Below are positions 3,126 to 27,393 of a stretch of DNA of 27,393 bases, piece after piece. Below the pieces are notes generated by a model, which saw nothing but the letters and a program-made list of their open reading frames with translations, had not been told where the DNA came from and made no database searches. Source of the stretch: Octopus sinensis (Eukaryota); contig NW_021833394.1 in NCBI RefSeq assembly GCF_006345805.1, positions 1 through 27,393 of the forward strand. Direction: 5' to 3'. Numbering within the stretch: position 1 is the first letter of the stretch; the number at the start of each line of letters is the position of its first letter. Position numbers and translations under genes: made by a program.

Positions 3126-3174
3126 GTGTATATTAAAAACTGGAAATATTTAATCAATAGATTCCTCTCACCCG

Positions 3175-3574
3175 AGGTGTAGTAGTGGCTGTGTGGTAAG
3201 TAGCTTGCTTACCAACCACATGGATCCGGGTTCAGTCCCACTGTTTGGCACCTTGGGCAAGTGTCTTCTACGATAGCCTCGGTGAGACAAAAGCCTTGTG
3301 AGTGGATTTGGTAGACGGAAACTGAAAGGAGTCCGCCGTATAAATGTATATATATGTATGTATGTGTGTGTGTGTGTGTGTGTGTGCGTTTGTCTCCCCA
3401 ACATCGCTTGACAACCGATGTTGGTGTGTTTACGTCCCCGTAACTTAGCGGTTCGGCAAAAGGGACCGATAGAATAAGTACTAGGCTTACAAGGAATAAG
3501 TCTTGGGGTCGATTTGCTCGACTACTGGTGGTGCTCCAGCATGGCCACAGTCGGAAACAAGTAAAAGATAAAAG
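3175..3574 (+). mobile_element. SINE family A, full length, internal (TA)/(TG) microsatellite
   Basis: A-box-like TGGCTGTGTGG, B-box-like GGGTTCAGTCCC, CORE-like GCACCTTGGGCAAGTGTCTTCT, internal microsatellite, 3' CCAGCATGGCCACAGTC..AAACAAGTAAAAGA tail. Many sister copies lie in this window. Confidence 0.9.
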
Positions 3575-3622
3575 ACACACTTAAGAAATATTTTATGCAG
3601 AGAGCGTCAAATAAACTAATTA

Positions 3623-5431: not shown

Positions 5432-5845
5432 AAGGCGCCTGTGGTAAGTAGCTTGCTAACCAACCACATGGTTCCGGGTTCAGTCCCGCTGCGTGGCATC
5501 TTGGGCAAGTGTCTTCTGCTATAGCCCCGGGCCGACCAATGCCTTGTGAGTGGATTTGGTAGACGGAAATTGAAAGAAGCCCGTCGTATATATGTATATA
5601 TATATGTGTATGTGTGTGTATTTGTGTGTCTGTGTTTGTCCCCCTAGCATTGCTTGACAACCGATGCTGGTGTGTTTATGTCCCCGTTACTTAGCGGTTC
5701 GGCAAAAGAGTCCGATAGAATAAGTACTGGGCTTACAAAAGAATAAGTCCCGGGGTCGAGTTGCTCGATTAAAGGTGGTGCTCCAGCATGGCTCCAGTCA
5801 AATGACTGAAACAAGTAAAATAGTAAAATAGAAAAATAGTAAATA
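5432..5845 (+). mobile_element. SINE family A, near full length
   Basis: High identity to 3175-3574 and 18956-19360; (GTAAAATA)n-type tail. Confidence 0.9.
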
Positions 5846-7410: not shown

Positions 7411-7554
7411 CATATGATGCATATAAATAGATGAAAAAAAATCGTTTTAAAATTTAAATTTAAAAAATGGCTGAAAGAAGGAAACAGTAATCAGAGAGGA
7501 GAAATCCAACGAAAAGGGAGGGAACTGAGGTAATGAAGGTGTCGAGGAATGATC

Positions 7555-7967
7555 TCTTTCTCTTTTTACTCTTTTCTTGTTTCAGTCATTTGAGTGTGGC
7601 CATGCTGGAGCACCGCCAGTAGTCGAGCAAATAGACCCCAGGACTTATTCTTTGTAAGCCCAGTACTTATTCTATCGGTCTCTTTTACCGAACCGCTAAG
7701 TTACGGGGACGTAAACACACCAGCATCGATTTTCAAGCGATGTTGGGGGGACAAACACAGACACACAAACATATACACATACATGCATATATATACATAG
7801 ATACGACGTACTTCTTTCAGTTTCCTTCTACCAAATCCACTCACAAGGCTTTGGTCGGCCCGTGGCTATAGTAGAAGAAACTTGCCCAAGGTGCCACGTA
7901 GTGTGACCGAACCCGGAACCATGTGGTCGGTAAGCAAGCTACTTACCACACAGCCACTCCTGCACCT
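7555..7967 (-). mobile_element. SINE family A, full length
   Basis: Reverse complement of family A from tail to head (..ACCACACAGCCACTCCTGCACCT). Confidence 0.9.
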
Positions 7968-8510: not shown

Positions 8511-8737
8511 TTTTATTCTCTTATTATTTTAGTCTTTTATTTGGTTCAGTCATTTGACTGCAGCCATACTGGAGCACCAGCATTAGTCGAGAAAATTGGC
8601 CCCAGGACTTATTCCTTGTAAGCGTAGTACTTATTCTATCGGTATCCTTTGCCGAACCGCTAAGTTACGGGGACGTAAACACACCAGCATCGGTTGTCAA
8701 GCGAAGGTGGGGGACAAACCCAGACACACAGACACAA

Positions 8738-8781
<44 letters not shown>

Positions 8782-8950
8782 TTATATACGACAAGCTTCT
8801 TTCAGTTTCCATCTACCAAAACCACTCACAAGGCTTTGGTCGGCCTGAAGCTATAGTAGAAGACACTAGCCCAAGGTGCCATAGAGTGGGACTGAACCCG
8901 GAACTATGTGGTTGGTAAGTAAGCTTCTTACCACACAGCCACCTCTGCGA
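8511..8950 (-). mobile_element. SINE family A, full length
   Basis: As above, with an internal (CA)n/(TA)n tract. Confidence 0.9.
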
Positions 8951-12350: not shown

Positions 12351-12390
12351 TATATATATGTTACTACGTTGTATGTGTATGTATATATAT
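12060..12390. repeat. (TA)n tract with periodic TTATATGA(A)TGCG interruptions
   Basis: Directly visible. Confidence 0.9.
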
Positions 12391-12391
12391 A

Positions 12392-12600
12392 AGGCAGCGA
12401 GATGGCAGAATCGTTAGCACGCCGGGAGACATACTTAGCGCTATTTCGTCTTCCGTTACGTTCTGAGTTCAAATTCCGCCGAGGTCGACTTTGTCTTTCA
12501 TCCATTCGGGGTCTATTAAATAAGTACCAGTTACGCGTGATCGATTAATCACTTGTCTGTCCTTGTTGGTCCCCTTTATGCTTAGCCCCCTGTGGGAAAT
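12392..12600 (+). mobile_element. SINE family C (tRNA-derived)
   Basis: AGGCAGCGAGATGGCAGAATCGTTAGCACGCCGGG..TTCTGAGTTCAAATTCCGCCGAGGTCGACTTTGTCTTTCATCC..; high identity to 27141-27373. Confidence 0.9.
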
Positions 12601-12725: not shown

Positions 12726-12772
12726 AAAACCATATAAAGGAAACTTTATAATTATTCCCTTTAAATAATTTA

Positions 12773-13180
12773 TTATATTAAAGGCATTTCTACACGTAAA
12801 TACCTCACCCTATGAGGGACTCTTAATGTCAAAACAAGCATAATAAATATACATTGTACCGACAGCGAGGGAATGCAACTAGGAAATCGTCTCTTAAAAA
12901 TAGATTCAACATATCAGACGGACACTATTAGGTGTTCGTCTGGTACGTTGAATTTTGTTCATTTTTATGTATCTTGATTGTGACTGCAATGACGATTGGA
13001 AAGTGGATTATGTACACAAACAATGAAATCATATGATTTGCGGCTAAATCTGTTTTGAAGAGACGATTTCCAAGATGCATTCTCTCGCTATCAGTACACT
13101 GTATATTCATTATGGTAGTTTTGACTTTAAGAGACCCTCATAGCGTGAGGCATTTACGTGTTGTAATGCCCTGAATATAA
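12773..13180. mobile_element. Fold-back element: 134-bp inverted arms (12773-12906 / 13047-13180)
   Basis: Hand alignment gives an ungapped match with 19 mismatches in 134 bp (about 86%). The spacer holds a 22-bp hairpin and a decayed HHR. Confidence 0.9.
12984..13043 (+). ncRNA. Decayed type I hammerhead motif in spacer of fold-back element
   Basis: CUGCA AUGACGA UUG..CAA U GAA AUCA UA UGAU U / UGCGG. It has a 5-bp stem I and palindromic stem III; C3>A, and the cleavage triplet is AUU. Confidence 0.5.
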
Positions 13181-13204
13181 TTTAATATAATATAATATAA
13201 TGTA

Positions 13205-18014: not shown

Positions 18015-18058
18015 ATATAATTTGTGTGTGTGTGTGCGTGTATATACAACTAATGTAG

Positions 18059-18103
18059 GATAAAATTTTTTTCGAAAAAGAATTTTATCAATGGTCAGCA
18101 TTC
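18059..18103 (-). ncRNA. Hammerhead-like relic ('beta' type)
   Basis: GAAUG CUGACCA UU GAUAAA AUUC UUUUUC GAAA AAAAUUUUAUC. It has G8>C and no proper stem I. Confidence 0.35.
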
Positions 18104-18264
18104 AAAAAATACCTTTAAAGGTTAAATTTATAAATAACATATAAAATAAGGGCAGATGAAAAATTCTAATGCCAAATATGCCGAAAAAGACAAAATTGTC
18201 AATAACCATTATAATTTAAGCGTCTCGAAGCAAGCCGATAGAAGTTTCTAAAAAAAATCCGTTA

Positions 18265-18325
18265 TTACCGTATTGGTCCTAATTTCGGGGTTAATTCATA
18301 AGAATTTTCCCCTCCTCAGCGATAA
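18265..18325 (-). ncRNA. Canonical type I hammerhead ribozyme
   Basis: UUAUCG CUGAGGA GGGG-AAAAUUC-UUAU-GAAUUAA-CCCC GAA AUU AGGACC AAU A / CGGUAA. Complete core, 6-bp stem I, G-C-closed stem II, 3-bp stem III, AUA triplet; predicted cut between 18271 and 18270. Confidence 0.85.
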
Positions 18326-18407
18326 ATACGTAAGACATAAATGAAATACTTACTCATACCCATGGAAAAAGCAAGCACTAAGTCCTGAGCATACCTAAGT
18401 ACAGACC

Positions 18408-18932: not shown

Positions 18933-18955
18933 TTATATATATGTATATATATATA

Positions 18956-19360
18956 TTACTCTTTTACTCTTTTACTTGTTTCAGTCATTTGACTGCGGCC
19001 ATGCTGGAGCCCCACCTTTAGTGGAGCAAATCGCTCCCAGGACTTATTCTTTGTAAGCCTAGTACTTATTCTATCGGTCTCTTTTGCCGAACCGCTAAGT
19101 GACGGGGACGTAAACACACCACCATCGGTTGTCAAGCGACGTTGGAGGGACAAACACAGACACACAAACTCACACACACATATATATATATATACATATA
19201 TACGACGGGCTTCTTTCAGTTTCCGTCTACCAAATCCACTCACAAGGCTTTGGTCGGCCCGAGGCTATAGTAGAAGACACTTGCCCAAGGTGCCACGCAG
19301 TGGGACTGAACCCGGAACCATATGGTTGGTTAGCAAGCTACTTACCACACAGCTACTCCT
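18956..19360 (-). mobile_element. SINE family A, full length, low divergence
   Basis: Near-consensus, with an (ACTCTTTT)n tail on the + strand. Confidence 0.92.
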
Positions 19361-22189: not shown

Positions 22190-22280
22190 GTGGTTCGCGA
22201 AGAGAGACCGATAGAATAAGTACTAGCCTCATAGACATTAAGTCCTGGGTTCGAATGACTGAAACAAATAAAAGAATACA
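22190..22280 (+). mobile_element. SINE family A with large internal deletions
   Basis: Head CGTGGCTGTGTGGTT is joined directly to CGCGAAGAGAGACCGATAGAATAAGTACT..AATGACTGAAACAAATAAAAG. Confidence 0.75.
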
Positions 22281-22291
22281 TATATATACAT

Positions 22292-22678
22292 ACTCTCTTT
22301 ACTCTTTTACTTGTTTCATTCATTTGACTGCGGCCATGCTGGAGCACCGCCTTTTAATCGAGCAAATCGACTCCGGGACTTATTCTTTTGTAAGCCCAGT
22401 ACTTCTTCTATCGCTAAGTAACGGGGACATAAACACACCATCATCGGTTGTCAAGCAATGCTAGGGGGACAAACACAGACACACAAACACACGCACGCAT
22501 ATATATATGTACATATATACGACGGGCTTCTTTCCGTCTACCAAATCCACTCACAAGGCTTTGGTCGGCCTGAGGCTATAGTAGAAGACACTTGCCCAAG
22601 GTGCCACGCAGTGGTACTGAACCCGGAACCATGTGGTTGGTAAACAAGCTACTTACCACACAGCCACTCCTGCGCCTA
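22292..22678 (-). mobile_element. SINE family A, full length
   Basis: Near-consensus, ending ..CCACACAGCCACTCCTGCGCCT. Confidence 0.92.
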
Positions 22679-24875: not shown

Positions 24876-24964
24876 TTATTGTTTCTCTTCGACTTCTCCA
24901 AACTCTCATGCTAAATCGCAGCAATAATATCAAAGCTTTAAGAAAACTCCAACCAGGGTAACAT

Positions 24965-25478
24965 CACACAGGGTATGGCCTGGTCAGCCTGTAATGACAT
25001 GCATAAGATCTGGTCATCAAATCTAAGTAGAAACTTCAAACTTGAAATCTTCAAAGCCACAGTCGAACCAATTCTACTATATGGCTCAGAAACCTGGACG
25101 TTATCAAAGAAGCTTGAGAGGCGGTTGGATGGAACCTACACTCGCCTCCTTATGAGAGCTCAAAATCTCTCGTGGAAGCGCCATCCAACCAAAATGCAAA
25201 TATATGGGAAACTACCATCTGTGTCATCTCTTGTGAAAGGTAGAGAGTCTAGTTTGCTGGACATTGTTGTAGAGCTCAAAAAGAAGTAATTTCCTCTTCT
25301 CTCTCTGGAAGCCATCTTCTTGCAATACAGAGGGCGCACACTCCTACCCTGATGTAATCTCCAGGGATACAGGCATCCAGCAACAGGACCTCCGTAATAC
25401 CATGATGGACCGTGAAGTCTGGCGTAGCATGGTAAATTCCATTGTCTCGACCACGGTCGAACGATGATGATGATGAAC
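24965..25478 (+). mobile_element. RTE-clade LINE, 5'-truncated 3' end with (GAT)n tail
   Basis: GMAWSACNDMHKIWSSNLSRNFKLEIFKATVEPILLYGSETWTLSKKLERRLDGTYTRLLMRAQNLSWK, then frameshifted FAGHC..DREVWRSMV. It ends in a TCGACC-AC-GGTCGA hairpin followed by GATGATGATGATGA. Confidence 0.88.
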
Positions 25479-25555
25479 ATCACACAAACCTGTTGGCGCA
25501 CAGTGACCGATGGGATAAGAACCTGGCATTAAAAAAATAACTGCTGAGGATGATT

Positions 25556-25999
25556 GATAAAATTACTATTTCTACGAGAGATATTCAGCAACAGTACTTT
25601 GTAGTAAAGATTGTTTGCCAACATAACATGGCAGTCCTGGTTTAGGACTAATGTTGCTGTAATTTAGCCCCAGGAGACATCCTCTCAAACTGGCCATACG
25701 GCACGATCTATGTCCTTATATTTTCGAACAAGGGAATGTAGCACCCCCACTCAGCTCAAAACAATACCTATGTATCGTGATTTCCGGGTTATTTCCCCTC
25801 ATCAGCACAGAGGGCTAAAGGTGGGAATGCCAAATTCCCGTTTTGAGCTGTGTGAGGATGCTAGATTCCCTTGTTCGAAAATATAAGGACACAAATGGTA
25901 TCGTATAGCCAGCTGGAGAAGATGTCTCCTGGGGCTAAATTACAGCAACATATGTCTTAAACCAGGACTGTCGTGTCATGTTGGCAAACAATCTTTACT
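25556..25999 (-). mobile_element. 444-bp fold-back element: 160-bp inverted arms (25603-25762 / 25840-25999), 12-bp TSD
   Basis: Ungapped hand alignment gives 19 mismatches in 160 bp (88%). CTGAGGATGATT is directly repeated at 25544-25555 and 26000-26011. Confidence 0.92.
25767..25811 (-). ncRNA. Minimal type I hammerhead ribozyme in the loop of the fold-back element
   Basis: UCUGUG CUGAUGA G GGG AAAUAA CCC G GAA AU CACG AU A / CAUAGG. Intact CUGAUGA and GAAA, 6-bp stem I, short near-palindromic stem III; G.G at the base of stem II. Confidence 0.78.
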
Positions 26000-26877
26000 C
26001 TGAGGATGATTTGTCCGACTAAACTCTTCAAAGTGCTGCTCCAGCATGGCTGCAGTCTATGACTGAAACAAGAATAAATAATCATTGTCTAACAGCTCTA
26101 TAAAGTTTGATAAATACTGTAAGTTTATGTCATTTTATTAATACTAAAATATCGAAAACTGTGCGGAGTTGTGACCGTGCTTTACCAAAGACAAACTTAC
26201 AATCCACTGCATGTCCCCATACAATTCATTTTTATCAATTTGGATATCTGAGTCGTCTTCCTTGCATTTAAAAACCGTTATCGATTCCGTTAATGAATTT
26301 TCTTTTGATTTCGATTATCTAGTTTTACCATCAGAGTGAATTCCACTTTAACTGAGATGAAGTAGAGTATTACTTGTGAAAGAGATCAACTTGTGGCAGT
26401 ACAACGTAAGATGTTAACAATCAATAAGAAATAAACCAGTTAAAGTAAAAATTTTTGTGCATTGCTAACTGAATAAAGAATCACCCAGAATTATCGTAGC
26501 GTAATTCTTCATTCGTTACTTTAACATTTGTCAACTCATTTCAGTCATTTTCTAGACTTGGCATGGCACTTCAGTGCGATTAAGTAGATGAGGTCATTGC
26601 GAATTTACAACTTTTGGTTGTAAGATTTTCGGCATCGTCGCTAAGAAAAGCTCTAAATTTTTGCTGTTAGAGCATTGACTTATGTGAATCACGTTTTATG
26701 AGGTTATTATGAATGTTTTTTAGCTTCGGGTTTATGAGAAATGTAAGAAGTTTCGACTAAATCCGTCACAAATTTCAATAAATAGCATGTTACTGGCATG
26801 TAAGTTTACACGAAATTAGGAACATTAATGTCTATTCCTTTCCTTTTGTTCCCACTGCTTATCCCAGGTAAGCTCAG

Positions 26878-27140: not shown

Positions 27141-27373
27141 CTATTTCTTTACTACCCACAAGGGGCTAAACACAGAGAGGACAAACAAGGACAGACAAAC
27201 GGATTAAGTCGATTCTATCGACCCCAGTGCGTAACTAGTACTTATTCAATCGACCCCGAAAGGATGAAAGGCAAAGTCGACCTCGGCGGAATTTGAACTC
27301 AGAACGTAACGGCAGACGAAATGCCGATAAGCATTTCGCCCGGCGTGCTAACGATTCTGCCAGCTCGCCGCCT
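27141..27373 (-). mobile_element. SINE family C, full length, low divergence
   Basis: The minus strand reads AGGCGGCGAGCTGGCAGAATCGTTAGCACGCCGGGCGAAATGCTT..GAGTTCAAATTCCGCCGAGGTCGACTTTGCCTTTCATCCTTTCGGGGTCGA... Confidence 0.92.
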
Positions 27374-27393
27374 ATAACATTTACATTCTGTAA

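What the first reader, a model, noticed from the sequence alone, without database searches (positions are those of the whole stretch)
25556..25999. 444-bp hairpin element with hammerhead in the loop and a 12-bp target-site duplication
Seen: 160-bp arms (88% identity), a 77-bp spacer containing the HHR, an asymmetric 47-bp extension on one side, and TSD CTGAGGATGATT. Of 13 transition mismatches between the arms, 9 would be G.U pairs on the HHR (minus) strand versus 4 on the plus strand (weak support). Established: long TSDs with asymmetric ends fit target-primed reverse transcription better than cut-and-paste MITEs. This is the clearest example of the proposed fold-back ribozyme element.
Basis: partly seen in the sequence, partly recalled or inferred. 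Interest (0 to 1): 0.85.

Follow-up and report, generated by a model that had tools for sequence, protein, structure and literature searches.

The report
Penelope-type hairpin insert of hammerhead retrozyme
The 444-bp hairpin is a dead, roughly 6%-decayed copy of a 353-nt hammerhead-carrying non-coding repeat (a "retrozyme") that was pasted in by reverse transcription in the head-to-head, one-tailed way typical of Penelope-like retroelements. It is a new family of a known kind, not a new class of fold-back element.

Summary
In detail: 160-nt arms (141/160 complementary), a 77-nt spacer, a 47-nt one-sided extension and an exact 12-bp target-site duplication.

A complete hammerhead core lies on the minus strand, with cleavage predicted at 25773|25772. 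A strict descriptor finds it (0 hits in 200 shuffled windows). No Rfam hammerhead model does.

The host genome (2.7 Gb, probably an octopus) holds on the order of thousands of relatives. All derive from a 353-nt non-coding unit that also occurs as head-to-tail multimers.

- **Insert structure:** each insert has its own 7-15-bp duplication (mostly 12-13) and its own inversion point, often with 2-5 nt of microhomology.
- **End rule:** the outer ends fall at two fixed sites about 55 nt apart. In 41 of 42 head-to-head inserts one arm ends at each site.
- **Match to known biology:** this is the Penelope-like element signature of an inverted 5'-truncated copy plus a "tail". It agrees with in-vitro work showing that a PLE protein nicks and extends both DNA strands from two internal RNA start sites.

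The arm mismatches are private, neutral decay. The G.U bias is not significant (family-wide 189 v 169). The hairpin is therefore a by-product of insertion, not a selected structure.

Retrotransposition is supported; a new "fold-back ribozyme element" class is not. The autonomous partner was not identified.

The parts
25544..25555 (.). Left copy of the 12-bp target-site duplication CTGAGGATGATT. Its last TT could equally be the first bases of the tail.
   Evidence: 7-15-bp duplications flank nearly all complete family members
25556..25843 (-). Long arm: a 5'-truncated sense copy of the 353-nt unit, read on the minus strand. It covers unit positions 273-353 (the stretch upstream of the hammerhead plus the hammerhead), then 1 to about 227. 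It ends at RT start site 2 (..AATTTTATC, consensus ..AATTTTCTAA).
   Evidence: nhmmer with the family HMM; BLAST mapping to the consensus
25556..25602 (-). 'Tail': the stretch between the two alternative 3' ends (unit positions about 173-227), present on this arm only. The consensus holds a 7-bp stem-loop ATCTCAC-GTT-GTGAGAT. This copy has lost 11 bp of it.
   Evidence: alignment of 27 copies; end-point clusters at q~172 and q~227
25767..25811 (-). Hammerhead ribozyme motif, type I architecture. Helix I is 25811-25806 with 25772-25767. CUGAUGA is 25805-25799. Helix II is GGGG-AAAUAA-CCCG. GAAA follows, then the short helix III AUCACGAU (consensus palindrome AUCGCGAU). A17 is 25773, and predicted cleavage is 25773|25772.
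   Evidence: descriptor scan with 0/200 shuffle hits; coordinates checked; consensus cores cofold as a double hammerhead; no Rfam hit
25839..25842 (.). Inversion junction: the 4 nt GTTT shared by the inner ends of both arms (microhomology).
25839..25999 (+). Short arm: a second 5'-truncated sense copy of the same unit, read on the plus strand. It covers unit positions 10 to about 169 and ends at RT start site 1 (..CAATCTTTACT, consensus ..CTTTACTCC(A)), with no tail.
26000..26011 (.). Right copy of the target-site duplication CTGAGGATGATT.

Best explanation
**What it is.** The region is one insertion of a non-autonomous, non-coding retroelement. Its unit is a 353-nt, 40% GC RNA carrying a type-I hammerhead ribozyme. 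This makes it a metazoan 'non-LTR retrozyme' family.

**Inferred life cycle**
1. Multimeric transcripts of tandem copies cleave themselves. Two neighbouring hammerheads pair their palindromic helix III (AUCGCGAU) into a double hammerhead.
2. The monomers are strongly self-paired and probably circularise.
3. The RNA is then copied into the genome in trans by the RT/GIY-YIG protein of a Penelope-like element (PLE). Such elements are abundant and intact in this genome.

**Integration model (partly shown, partly inferred)**
1. The target is cut on both strands about 12 bp apart.
2. Each 3' end primes reverse transcription inside the RNA. One starts at site 1 (unit position about 172) and the other at site 2 (about 227).
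3. Both cDNAs run towards the RNA 5' end and stop at variable points.
4. Their ends are joined through a few bases of microhomology and filled in.

The product is a head-to-head inverted repeat with a copy-specific junction, a roughly 55-nt 'tail' on one side only, and a roughly 12-bp target-site duplication.

**The window copy.** It is such a product: about 0.87 of a unit facing about 0.45 of a unit. It has a single hammerhead, so it cannot release an RNA by double cleavage. Each arm has since drifted 6-8% from the family consensus. The hairpin is a scar of integration, not a maintained structure.
For: **Shown in silico**
- **Family size:** 2871 first-look candidates for the element and 1893 for the tail-to-hammerhead tandem junction.
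- **Unit:** a 353-nt unit with head-to-tail multimers of up to 3.6 units lying within one duplication-flanked insert (L066).
- **Duplications:** own TSDs of 7-15 bp, mostly 12-13, flank nearly all of the 55 mapped inserts.
- **Junctions:** every copy has a different inversion point, and 18 junctions show 2-5 nt of overlap.
- **Ends:** the outer ends cluster at q164-177 and q225-235.
- **End pairing:** 41 of 42 head-to-head inserts pair one end of each kind (p = 2e-11). In the less biased sample it is 16 of 17.
- **Single-arm inserts:** 5'-truncated single-arm inserts with a TSD end at either site, so both sites are genuine start points.
- **Coding capacity:** no ORF above 73 codons; GC is 40.5%.
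- **Hammerhead:** the core is complete in the consensus and passes a descriptor with 0/200 shuffle hits.
- **RNA folds:** the double-hammerhead cofold is -30.9 kcal/mol against 2 x -12.1. The circular monomer folds at -117 kcal/mol, z = -7.6.
- **PLE genes in the genome:** RVT_1 plus a C-terminal GIY-YIG domain, many with open frames of about 781 aa.
- **A second family:** an unrelated hammerhead family in the same window and genome shows the same rule. Its short inverted arms end at q272-278 in 9 of 9 cases, while the long arm runs on.

**From the literature**
- PLE inserts are 5'-truncated and partly tandem. They often carry an inverted 5'-truncated copy and a tail at one end only (PMC8557442).
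- A purified PLE protein cleaves and extends both strands and starts RT at two adjacent internal sites that delimit the tail (PMC11167929).
- Metazoan retrozymes are tandem units of about 170-400 nt with a type-I hammerhead, low GC and long TSDs (PMC7229834).
Against: - No Rfam hammerhead model scores the motif, even at E <= 10. Catalysis is untested. The pair closing helix II would be A.G (G.G in the window copy).
- No autonomous PLE sharing sequence with the unit was found. The 30 PLE 3' halves in hand give no BLAST hit, and nhmmer finds only unrelated neighbouring copies. More genome sequence could not be fetched.
- The tail is 55-58 nt, against the 30-40 nt described for PLEs.
- Both copy samples were picked by similarity to a query, so the distributions of junctions and ends are not an unbiased census.
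- Arm 5' ends show no preference for the ribozyme cleavage site. There is therefore no genomic trace that cleaved RNA was the template.
Confidence: 0.78

Rival explanations
1. The element and enzyme family are the same, but the inverted arm arises differently. A single cDNA primed at site 2 folds back on itself through microhomology and self-primes second-strand synthesis. That synthesis stops about 55 nt short because the RNP still sits on the tail region. Under this reading site 1 is a stop point, not a second start point.
For: Microhomology at the junctions and unpaired loops of variable size fit snap-back equally well. The near-obligate pairing of one end of each kind would follow automatically. 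Some inserts have arms much closer to each other than to the consensus (L002 at 2.9%, L014 at 2.5%).
Against: Single-arm inserts with their own TSD end exactly at site 1 (L071, L079), so site 1 works as a start point on its own. In vitro, a PLE protein extends both strands and uses two start sites (PMC11167929). By eye on the alignment, the subfamily-diagnostic base at q170 differs between the two arms in about 5 of 25 inserts. A pure self-copy would not produce that, although the position lies 2 nt from the arm end.
Confidence: 0.2
2. The unit is a SINE-like passenger of a LINE (RTE, CR1 or Dong-R4 are abundant in octopus genomes). The inverted structure is then L1-style twin priming.
For: TSDs of about 12 bp and 5' truncation also occur with LINE-mediated TPRT. 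A LINE-like RT C-terminal fragment lies directly upstream of the window copy, but that is mere adjacency.
Against: Twin priming joins two non-overlapping parts of one RNA and keeps a single 3' end. Here both arms start in the same 3' region and overlap over about 160 nt. There is no poly(A) or microsatellite 3' tail. Two fixed alternative 3' ends with a one-sided tail are a PLE hallmark, not a LINE one (PMC8557442, PMC11167929).
Confidence: 0.07
3. It is a new class of fold-back ribozyme element. The long hairpin with the hammerhead in its loop is the functional, transposing form and is maintained by selection.
For: The window copy looks that way, and the 27 most similar copies share roughly the same layout. 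The 9 v 4 G.U count leans that way.
Against: - That similarity of layout is an effect of selecting copies by similarity to the query. A second sample has junctions all over the unit, the hammerhead in either, both or neither arm, multi-unit arms and single-arm inserts.
- Arm-to-arm divergence within inserts (8.9%) equals that between inserts (9.5%). All 19 window mismatches are private changes in one arm.
- There is no G.U excess family-wide (189 v 169).
Confidence: 0.04
4. It is a cut-and-paste MITE or Foldback-type DNA transposon.
For: It has long inverted repeats and a flanking direct repeat.
Against: There are no fixed terminal repeats around a distinct core. TSD length varies from 7 to 15 bp. 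The ends are asymmetric. Head-to-tail multimers and 5'-truncated single arms carry TSDs.
Confidence: 0.01

Closest known systems
Insertion architecture of endonuclease-positive Penelope-like elements (Penelope/Poseidon, Neptune, Naiad; in-vitro model PAc from Anolis)
   Same: It shares 5' truncation, partial head-to-tail tandems, an adjacent inverted 5'-truncated copy, a short 'tail' at one end bounded by two alternative reverse-transcription start sites, and variable-length TSDs. It also shares a hammerhead in the repeated part, and T-rich ends of the duplicated target (about 22 of 32 end in T, often ..ATT; read by eye), reminiscent of PAc's ATT preference.
   Different: The unit has no RT/GIY-YIG ORF (353 nt in all). 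The tail is 55-58 nt rather than 30-40. The hammerhead is of the canonical metazoan type (6-bp helix I, short palindromic helix III), not the minimal PLE variant. No homology to an autonomous PLE was found.
Metazoan non-LTR retrozymes (coral, mussel, axolotl; Cervera & de la Pena 2020, PMC7229834; Li et al. 2026 preprint)
   Same: Both are non-coding tandem units of about 170-400 nt with one type-I hammerhead per unit, low GC, long TSDs and a strongly self-paired predicted circular monomer. Both co-occur with many PLEs.
   Different: This family's expression, self-cleavage and circles were not tested. Most copies sampled here are sub-unit head-to-head fragments rather than arrays. The papers read here do not describe the tail or head-to-head signature for retrozymes.
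Dimeric hammerheads of newt satellite 2 and Schistosoma Sm-alpha repeats
   Same: Helix III is too short to be stable in a monomer and is palindromic, so two neighbouring ribozymes can form an active double hammerhead (PMC4209133).
   Different: There is no sequence relationship. Loop 1 is replaced by a long rod closing the rest of the unit. The helix II closing pair is non-canonical.
L1 twin-priming inversions
   Same: Both have two priming events at one staggered break, microhomology at the internal junction and TSDs.
   Different: The arms here overlap and both start in the RNA's 3' region. There is no poly(A), and there are two fixed start sites.
MITEs / Foldback elements
   Same: The only shared features are the look of a single copy: long inverted arms and a flanking direct repeat.
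   Different: Junctions are variable, the ends are asymmetric, TSD length varies, and tandem and single-arm forms exist.

Membership tests
Metazoan non-LTR retrozyme | One type-I hammerhead with a complete catalytic core per unit | tested here: met
   The consensus and the window copy pass a strict descriptor, with 0 hits in 200 shuffled windows. 25 of 75 sampled family sites still pass. Caveats: the pair closing helix II is A.G, and activity was not assayed.
Metazoan non-LTR retrozyme | Short unit (about 150-450 bp) occurring as head-to-tail tandem copies | tested here: met
   The unit is 353 nt. Multimers reach 3.6 units (L066, L072, L089). The tandem junction has 1893 first-look candidates.
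Metazoan non-LTR retrozyme | Non-coding, low GC, no LTR/PBS/PPT, TSDs longer than 4 bp | tested here: met
   GC is 40.5% and the longest stop-free frame is 73 codons. TSDs are 7-15 bp.
Metazoan non-LTR retrozyme | Expressed, self-cleaved, and accumulating as linear and circular monomer RNA | not testable with these tools
   No transcript data were available. Only predicted folds exist.
Hammerhead ribozyme as defined by Rfam covariance models (Hammerhead_1, _3, _II, HH9, HH10) | Score at or above the family's gathering threshold | tested here: not met
   There was no hammerhead hit at gathering score or at E <= 10, in the window copy or in near-consensus copies.
Penelope-like element (autonomous, EN+) | Single ORF with a telomerase-like RT and a GIY-YIG endonuclease | tested here: not met
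   The unit has no ORF. Such ORFs are abundant elsewhere in the genome. The element can only be a non-autonomous dependant, not a PLE proper.
PLE-type insertion signature | 5'-truncated copies, partial tandems, and an inverted 5'-truncated copy joined head to head | tested here: met
PLE-type insertion signature | A 'tail' extension at one end only, delimited by two alternative internal RT start sites | tested here: met
   The ends cluster at q~172 and q~227. 41 of 42 head-to-head inserts have one of each. The length is 55-58 nt, against the published 30-40.
PLE-type insertion signature | Variable-length TSD; AT-rich or microsatellite target preference | tested here: inconclusive
   Variable TSDs are met. 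On target preference, the TSD 3' ends are mostly T and several relatives sit in microsatellites (L021, L047, L057). No statistical test against the genome background was made.
PLE-derived non-autonomous element | Sequence homology of the unit to the pLTR or 5' ORF of an autonomous PLE in the same genome | tested here: inconclusive
   No similarity was found to 30 PLE 3' halves. PLE 5' regions could not be fetched. The public protein set lacks close octopus PLEs.
MITE / Foldback DNA transposon | Fixed terminal inverted repeats and a fixed-length TSD | tested here: not met
   The inversion point differs in every copy, the ends are asymmetric, and TSDs are 7-15 bp.
L1-type twin priming | Two non-overlapping collinear segments of one RNA, with a poly(A) 3' end | tested here: not met
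   The arms overlap over about 160 nt, both start in the same 3' region, and there is no poly(A).

The most novel reading that the evidence does not exclude
These inserts may be a large natural record of the Penelope integration reaction acting on a non-coding ribozyme RNA. The near-obligate pairing of one site-1 end with one site-2 end (41/42; also 9/9 in a second, unrelated hammerhead family) would mean the two DNA strands are primed by one asymmetric RNP, for example a protein dimer holding two start sites about 55 nt apart. Two independent priming events would not give this pairing. It would also be direct structural evidence, not just co-occurrence or homology, that animal retrozymes are mobilised by PLE enzymes. 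The papers read here do not report this signature for retrozymes.
Probability: 0.45. Interest if true: 0.55.

Novelty: new member of a known kind. Interest (0 to 1): 0.4.

Why it matters
- **Annotation:** hairpins of this kind will be mis-called as MITEs, foldback elements or miRNA-like precursors. Rfam miRNA models gave spurious sub-threshold hits here. Recognising them as PLE-type inserts of a 353-nt unit corrects that for thousands of loci in cephalopod genomes.
- **Mechanism:** the family offers many independent integration products with exact start sites, junctions and duplications. PLE mobilisation has only just become tractable in vitro. The one-of-each end rule is a concrete, testable constraint on that mechanism and on the proposed dependence of animal retrozymes on PLEs.
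- **Host biology:** thousands of near-perfect 150-300-bp inverted repeats are potential double-stranded RNA sources in an animal with very active RNA editing. No trace of editing was seen in the copies themselves.

Tried and rejected
- **Rfam scans** of the window, the region and three loci gave no hammerhead hit, only sub-threshold miRNA/snoRNA noise caused by the hairpin.
- **Arm starts at the cleavage site.** Many arms seemed to begin at the ribozyme cleavage site. This was an artefact of aligning to a linear consensus. The junction sequences show the starts scattered around it.
- **RNA editing of the template.** I looked for an excess of A>G over T>C in sense orientation and found none (151 v 140). 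G>A v C>T was 231 v 171 (p = 0.18). CpG decay explains 30% of substitutions.
- **Selection on hairpin pairing.** I tested for G.U over A.C mismatches and for arms more alike than unrelated copies. Both tests were negative.
- **Search for the autonomous partner:**
  - A GIY-YIG search gave 30 PLE loci.
  - blastn and nhmmer of the unit against them found only two divergent retrozyme relatives lying nearby.
  - The public protein collection has no close octopus PLE; the best hit is 60% identical.
  - N-termini of mollusc PLE proteins show no likeness to the 28-codon frame that starts in CUGAUGA.
- **Hammerhead search near PLE genes.** A regex search near the PLE GIY-YIG domains found only a few minimal-type motifs in other families.

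Full report
**1. The observation.**
- The inverted repeat is as described: arms 25603-25762 and 25840-25999, with 141 of 160 bases complementary and 77 nt between them. An exact 12-bp direct repeat, CTGAGGATGATT, abuts both ends.
- The strand folds at -276 kcal/mol, z = -29.8.
- No Rfam family reaches threshold anywhere in the window, and no hammerhead model matches the region even at E <= 10.
- I therefore checked the ribozyme with a strict hand-written descriptor: CUGANGA; helix II of at least 3 bp, with the closing pair allowed to be non-canonical; GAAA; a helix III starting A15.1-U16.1 plus one more pair; H17; and helix I of at least 5 bp.
- The descriptor hits minus strand 25811->25767. 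It gives no hit in 200 block-shuffled copies of the 27-kb window.

**2. The host and the family.**
- The assembly is 2.72 Gb in 13,516 contigs. The window is full of microsatellites and SINE-like repeats. From memory this fits an octopus genome, but I did not test that.
- A search of the genome with the 444-bp element gave 2871 first-look candidates. All 40 that were scored are hairpins 80-86% identical to the query.
- Aligning 27 distinct copies with their flanks changed the picture in three ways:
  - Both outer ends are fixed. The long side begins TTAGAAAATTACTATTTTTAAATCTCAC.. and the short side ends ..CAATCTTTACTMC(A).
  - The one-sided extension is 55-58 nt in the consensus. The window copy has an 11-bp deletion in it.
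  - The centre differs from copy to copy.

**3. The unit.**
- Locus L011 shows the 3' end ..AATTTTCTAA running straight on into the sequence that lies upstream of the hammerhead. The basic unit is therefore circularly permuted, that is, tandem.
- A query across that junction had 1893 first-look candidates at 93-96% identity.
- The unit is 353 nt, 40.5% GC, and has no stop-free frame above 73 codons.
- It occurs as head-to-tail multimers inside single duplication-flanked inserts. L066, for example, reads 35-353, 1-353, 1-353, 1-226.
- The predicted circular monomer is strongly self-paired (-117 kcal/mol, z = -7.6 against mononucleotide shuffles). Helix I of the ribozyme extends into a long rod.
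- Helix III is the 8-nt palindrome AUCGCGAU. Two consensus cores cofold into a textbook double hammerhead (-30.9 kcal/mol against 2 x -12.1). Cervera and de la Pena describe this arrangement as typical of metazoan type-I hammerheads, which work as dimers in tandem transcripts (PMC4209133).
- Unit size, GC content, tandem habit, lack of coding capacity and long TSDs match the metazoan non-LTR retrozymes (PMC7229834).

**4. Anatomy of 55 inserts.**
- **Duplications.** Nearly every complete insert has its own duplication of 7-15 bp, mostly 12-13.
- **Arms.** Most inserts are two copies of the unit placed head to head. Each runs from a fixed 3' end inwards to a variable 5' end.
- **Junctions.** The inner junction differs in every insert. 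In 18 inserts it shows 2-5 nt of overlap, and once 12 nt.
- **Ends.** The outer ends fall in two clusters, unit positions 164-177 (site 1) and 225-235 (site 2).
- **End pairing.** Of 42 head-to-head inserts, 41 have one end of each kind (binomial p = 2e-11 against free combination). In the sample not chosen for likeness to the window copy it is 16 of 17.
- **Single arms.** Single-arm, 5'-truncated inserts with TSDs also exist and end at either site: L071 and L079 at site 1; L072, L074 and L078 at site 2.
- **Target.** The duplicated target usually ends in T, often ..ATT, next to the tail.

**5. What this matches.**
- Craig et al. (PMC8557442) describe Penelope-like element inserts as highly 5'-truncated and partly tandem. 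They often carry an inverted 5'-truncated copy at the 5' side and a 30-40-bp 'tail' at one end only.
- Frangieh et al. (PMC11167929) show that a purified PLE protein cleaves and extends both strands of the target. It starts reverse transcription at two adjacent sites inside the RNA, and the sequence between those sites is the genomic tail.
- The family studied here reproduces that signature point by point, except that its tail is longer.
- PLE genes are abundant in this genome. There are 4846 first-look GIY-YIG candidates and 8518 for an RT fragment. Many have open frames of about 781 codons, with RVT_1 followed by a C-terminal GIY-YIG domain. Published octopus repeat surveys also list Penelope among the recently active families (PMC13282606, PMC8967140).

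**6. The window copy in these terms.**
- On the minus strand a sense copy runs from unit position 273 through the hammerhead to site 2 (25843->25556).
- On the plus strand a second sense copy runs from position 10 to site 1 (25839->25999).
- The two copies share GTTT at the junction.
That is why the hammerhead appears to sit in a loop.

**7. Is the hairpin maintained?** No.
- All 19 arm mismatches in the window copy are private departures of one arm from the family consensus. Six are in the tail arm, eleven in the other, and two positions changed in both.
- Across 37 inserts, the two arms of one insert differ by 8.9% on average and arms of different inserts by 9.5%. Each arm is about 5.7% from the consensus.
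Over 43 inserts the count is 189 v 169 (p = 0.32).
- Substitutions show no sense-strand asymmetry that would indicate editing of the template RNA (A>G 151 v T>C 140). The 12 CpG sites account for 30% of all changes.
- On the calibration in PMC13282606 (Jukes-Cantor 0.065 is about 18 My), the burst would be some 15-20 My old. This is a rough inference.

**8. Generality.**
- The descriptor found a second hammerhead in the window (minus strand 18319->18271), in an unrelated repeat with 2502 first-look candidates. In nine of nine cases visible in the hit table, its short inverted partner arms end at one position (q272-278) while the long arm runs on.
- Two relatives of the main unit, about 65-70% identical, lie near PLE copies (L047, L057). 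They keep several blocks, including a hairpin at q85-99 with two compensatory double changes.

**9. What remains open.**
- Catalysis and expression are untested, and Rfam does not recognise the motif.
- The autonomous partner was not found. The PLE loci in hand are 3' halves of other families, and no more genome sequence could be fetched.
- The data cannot fully separate priming on both strands from snap-back self-priming of one cDNA. Single-arm inserts ending at site 1 and the in-vitro data favour the former.

**10. Verdict.**
- The 'new fold-back ribozyme element' reading is not supported.
- The feature is a new family, in a cephalopod-like genome, of a known kind: a hammerhead retrozyme inserted with the Penelope-type signature.
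- The one-of-each end rule and the retrozyme-PLE link it implies are the parts worth following up.

Noticed in passing
window 18045-18400, minus strand (hammerhead 18319->18271): A second, unrelated hammerhead-bearing repeat: TTATCG CTGAGGA GGGG..CCCC GAAA ..A|CGGTAA. It has 2502 first-look candidates in the genome at 91-94% identity, so it is younger than the main family. Its inverted partner arms end at q272-278 in 9 of 9 cases, which is the same tail rule. It abuts a (CA)n(TA)n microsatellite.
   Followed up: partly
window 24942-25467, plus strand: Stop-free frames (..KATVEPILLYGSETWTLSKKLERRLDGTYTRLL....DREVWRSMVNSIV..) that from memory resemble the C-terminal end of a LINE (RTE/CR1-type) reverse transcriptase. 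Pfam gives only a sub-threshold DUF6451 hit. The retrozyme sits about 75 bp downstream of it.
   Followed up: partly
window 12765-12906 and 13047-13188: Another hairpin: 142-nt arms, 85% complementary, 140-nt spacer, next to an (AT)n tract. It gave no hammerhead descriptor hit. It may be a further head-to-head insert of another family.
   Followed up: no
window 12379-12536 and 27229-27386: Two copies of a 158-nt repeat in inverted orientation, 14.7 kb apart and 88% complementary.
   Followed up: no
window 3168-3575, 5440-5838, 7552-7957, 8516-8942, 18951-19356, 22280-22667: At least six copies, 80-93% alike and on both strands, of a SINE-like repeat of about 400 bp (..GGCCATGCTGGAGCACCGCC.. 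/ ..CAGTTTCCGTCTACCAAATCCACTCACAAGGCTTTGGTCGGCCCGAGGCTATAGTAGAAGACACTTGCCCA..). It is usually bordered by microsatellites.
   Followed up: no
L063 1878-3000: A tandem array with a period of about 165 bp, made only of unit positions 12-172 of the retrozyme (at least 7 copies). It is a satellite-like derivative lacking the hammerhead.
   Followed up: no
L038 2340-2400 (and the same family in L047, L037, L053): The most abundant PLE family (RVT_1 plus a C-terminal GIY-YIG domain, many open frames of about 781 codons) has near its 3' end TTTGATAA-GGTTC..GAACC-GAAACATGTA. This is a minimal hammerhead-like motif with U3/A8 in place of the C3-G8 pair. The insert ends in (AT)n.
   Followed up: no
L039 about 977 (+) and about 2319 (-): An inverted pair of a minimal PLE-type hammerhead (CCTGATGAATGACTGC..GCAGGCACGAAACGATCGTAGT, with the palindromic loop GAUC). 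The pair flanks a decayed GIY-YIG fragment.
   Followed up: no
unit positions 85-99 (window about 25684-25670 on the minus arm); L047, L057: The hairpin GGAGAC-GAU-GUCUCC is kept in two 65-70%-identical relatives as AGAGGC-GGUG-GCCUCU (two compensatory double changes) and GAGGA-GAUG-UCUUC. This suggests a conserved RNA structure, possibly a protein-binding site.
   Followed up: partly
window 25726-25876 and loci L062, L066: Rfam plant and animal miRNA-precursor models give sub-threshold hits (up to 53 bits, E = 2e-8) on these hairpins. They are a likely source of false miRNA annotations.
   Followed up: no
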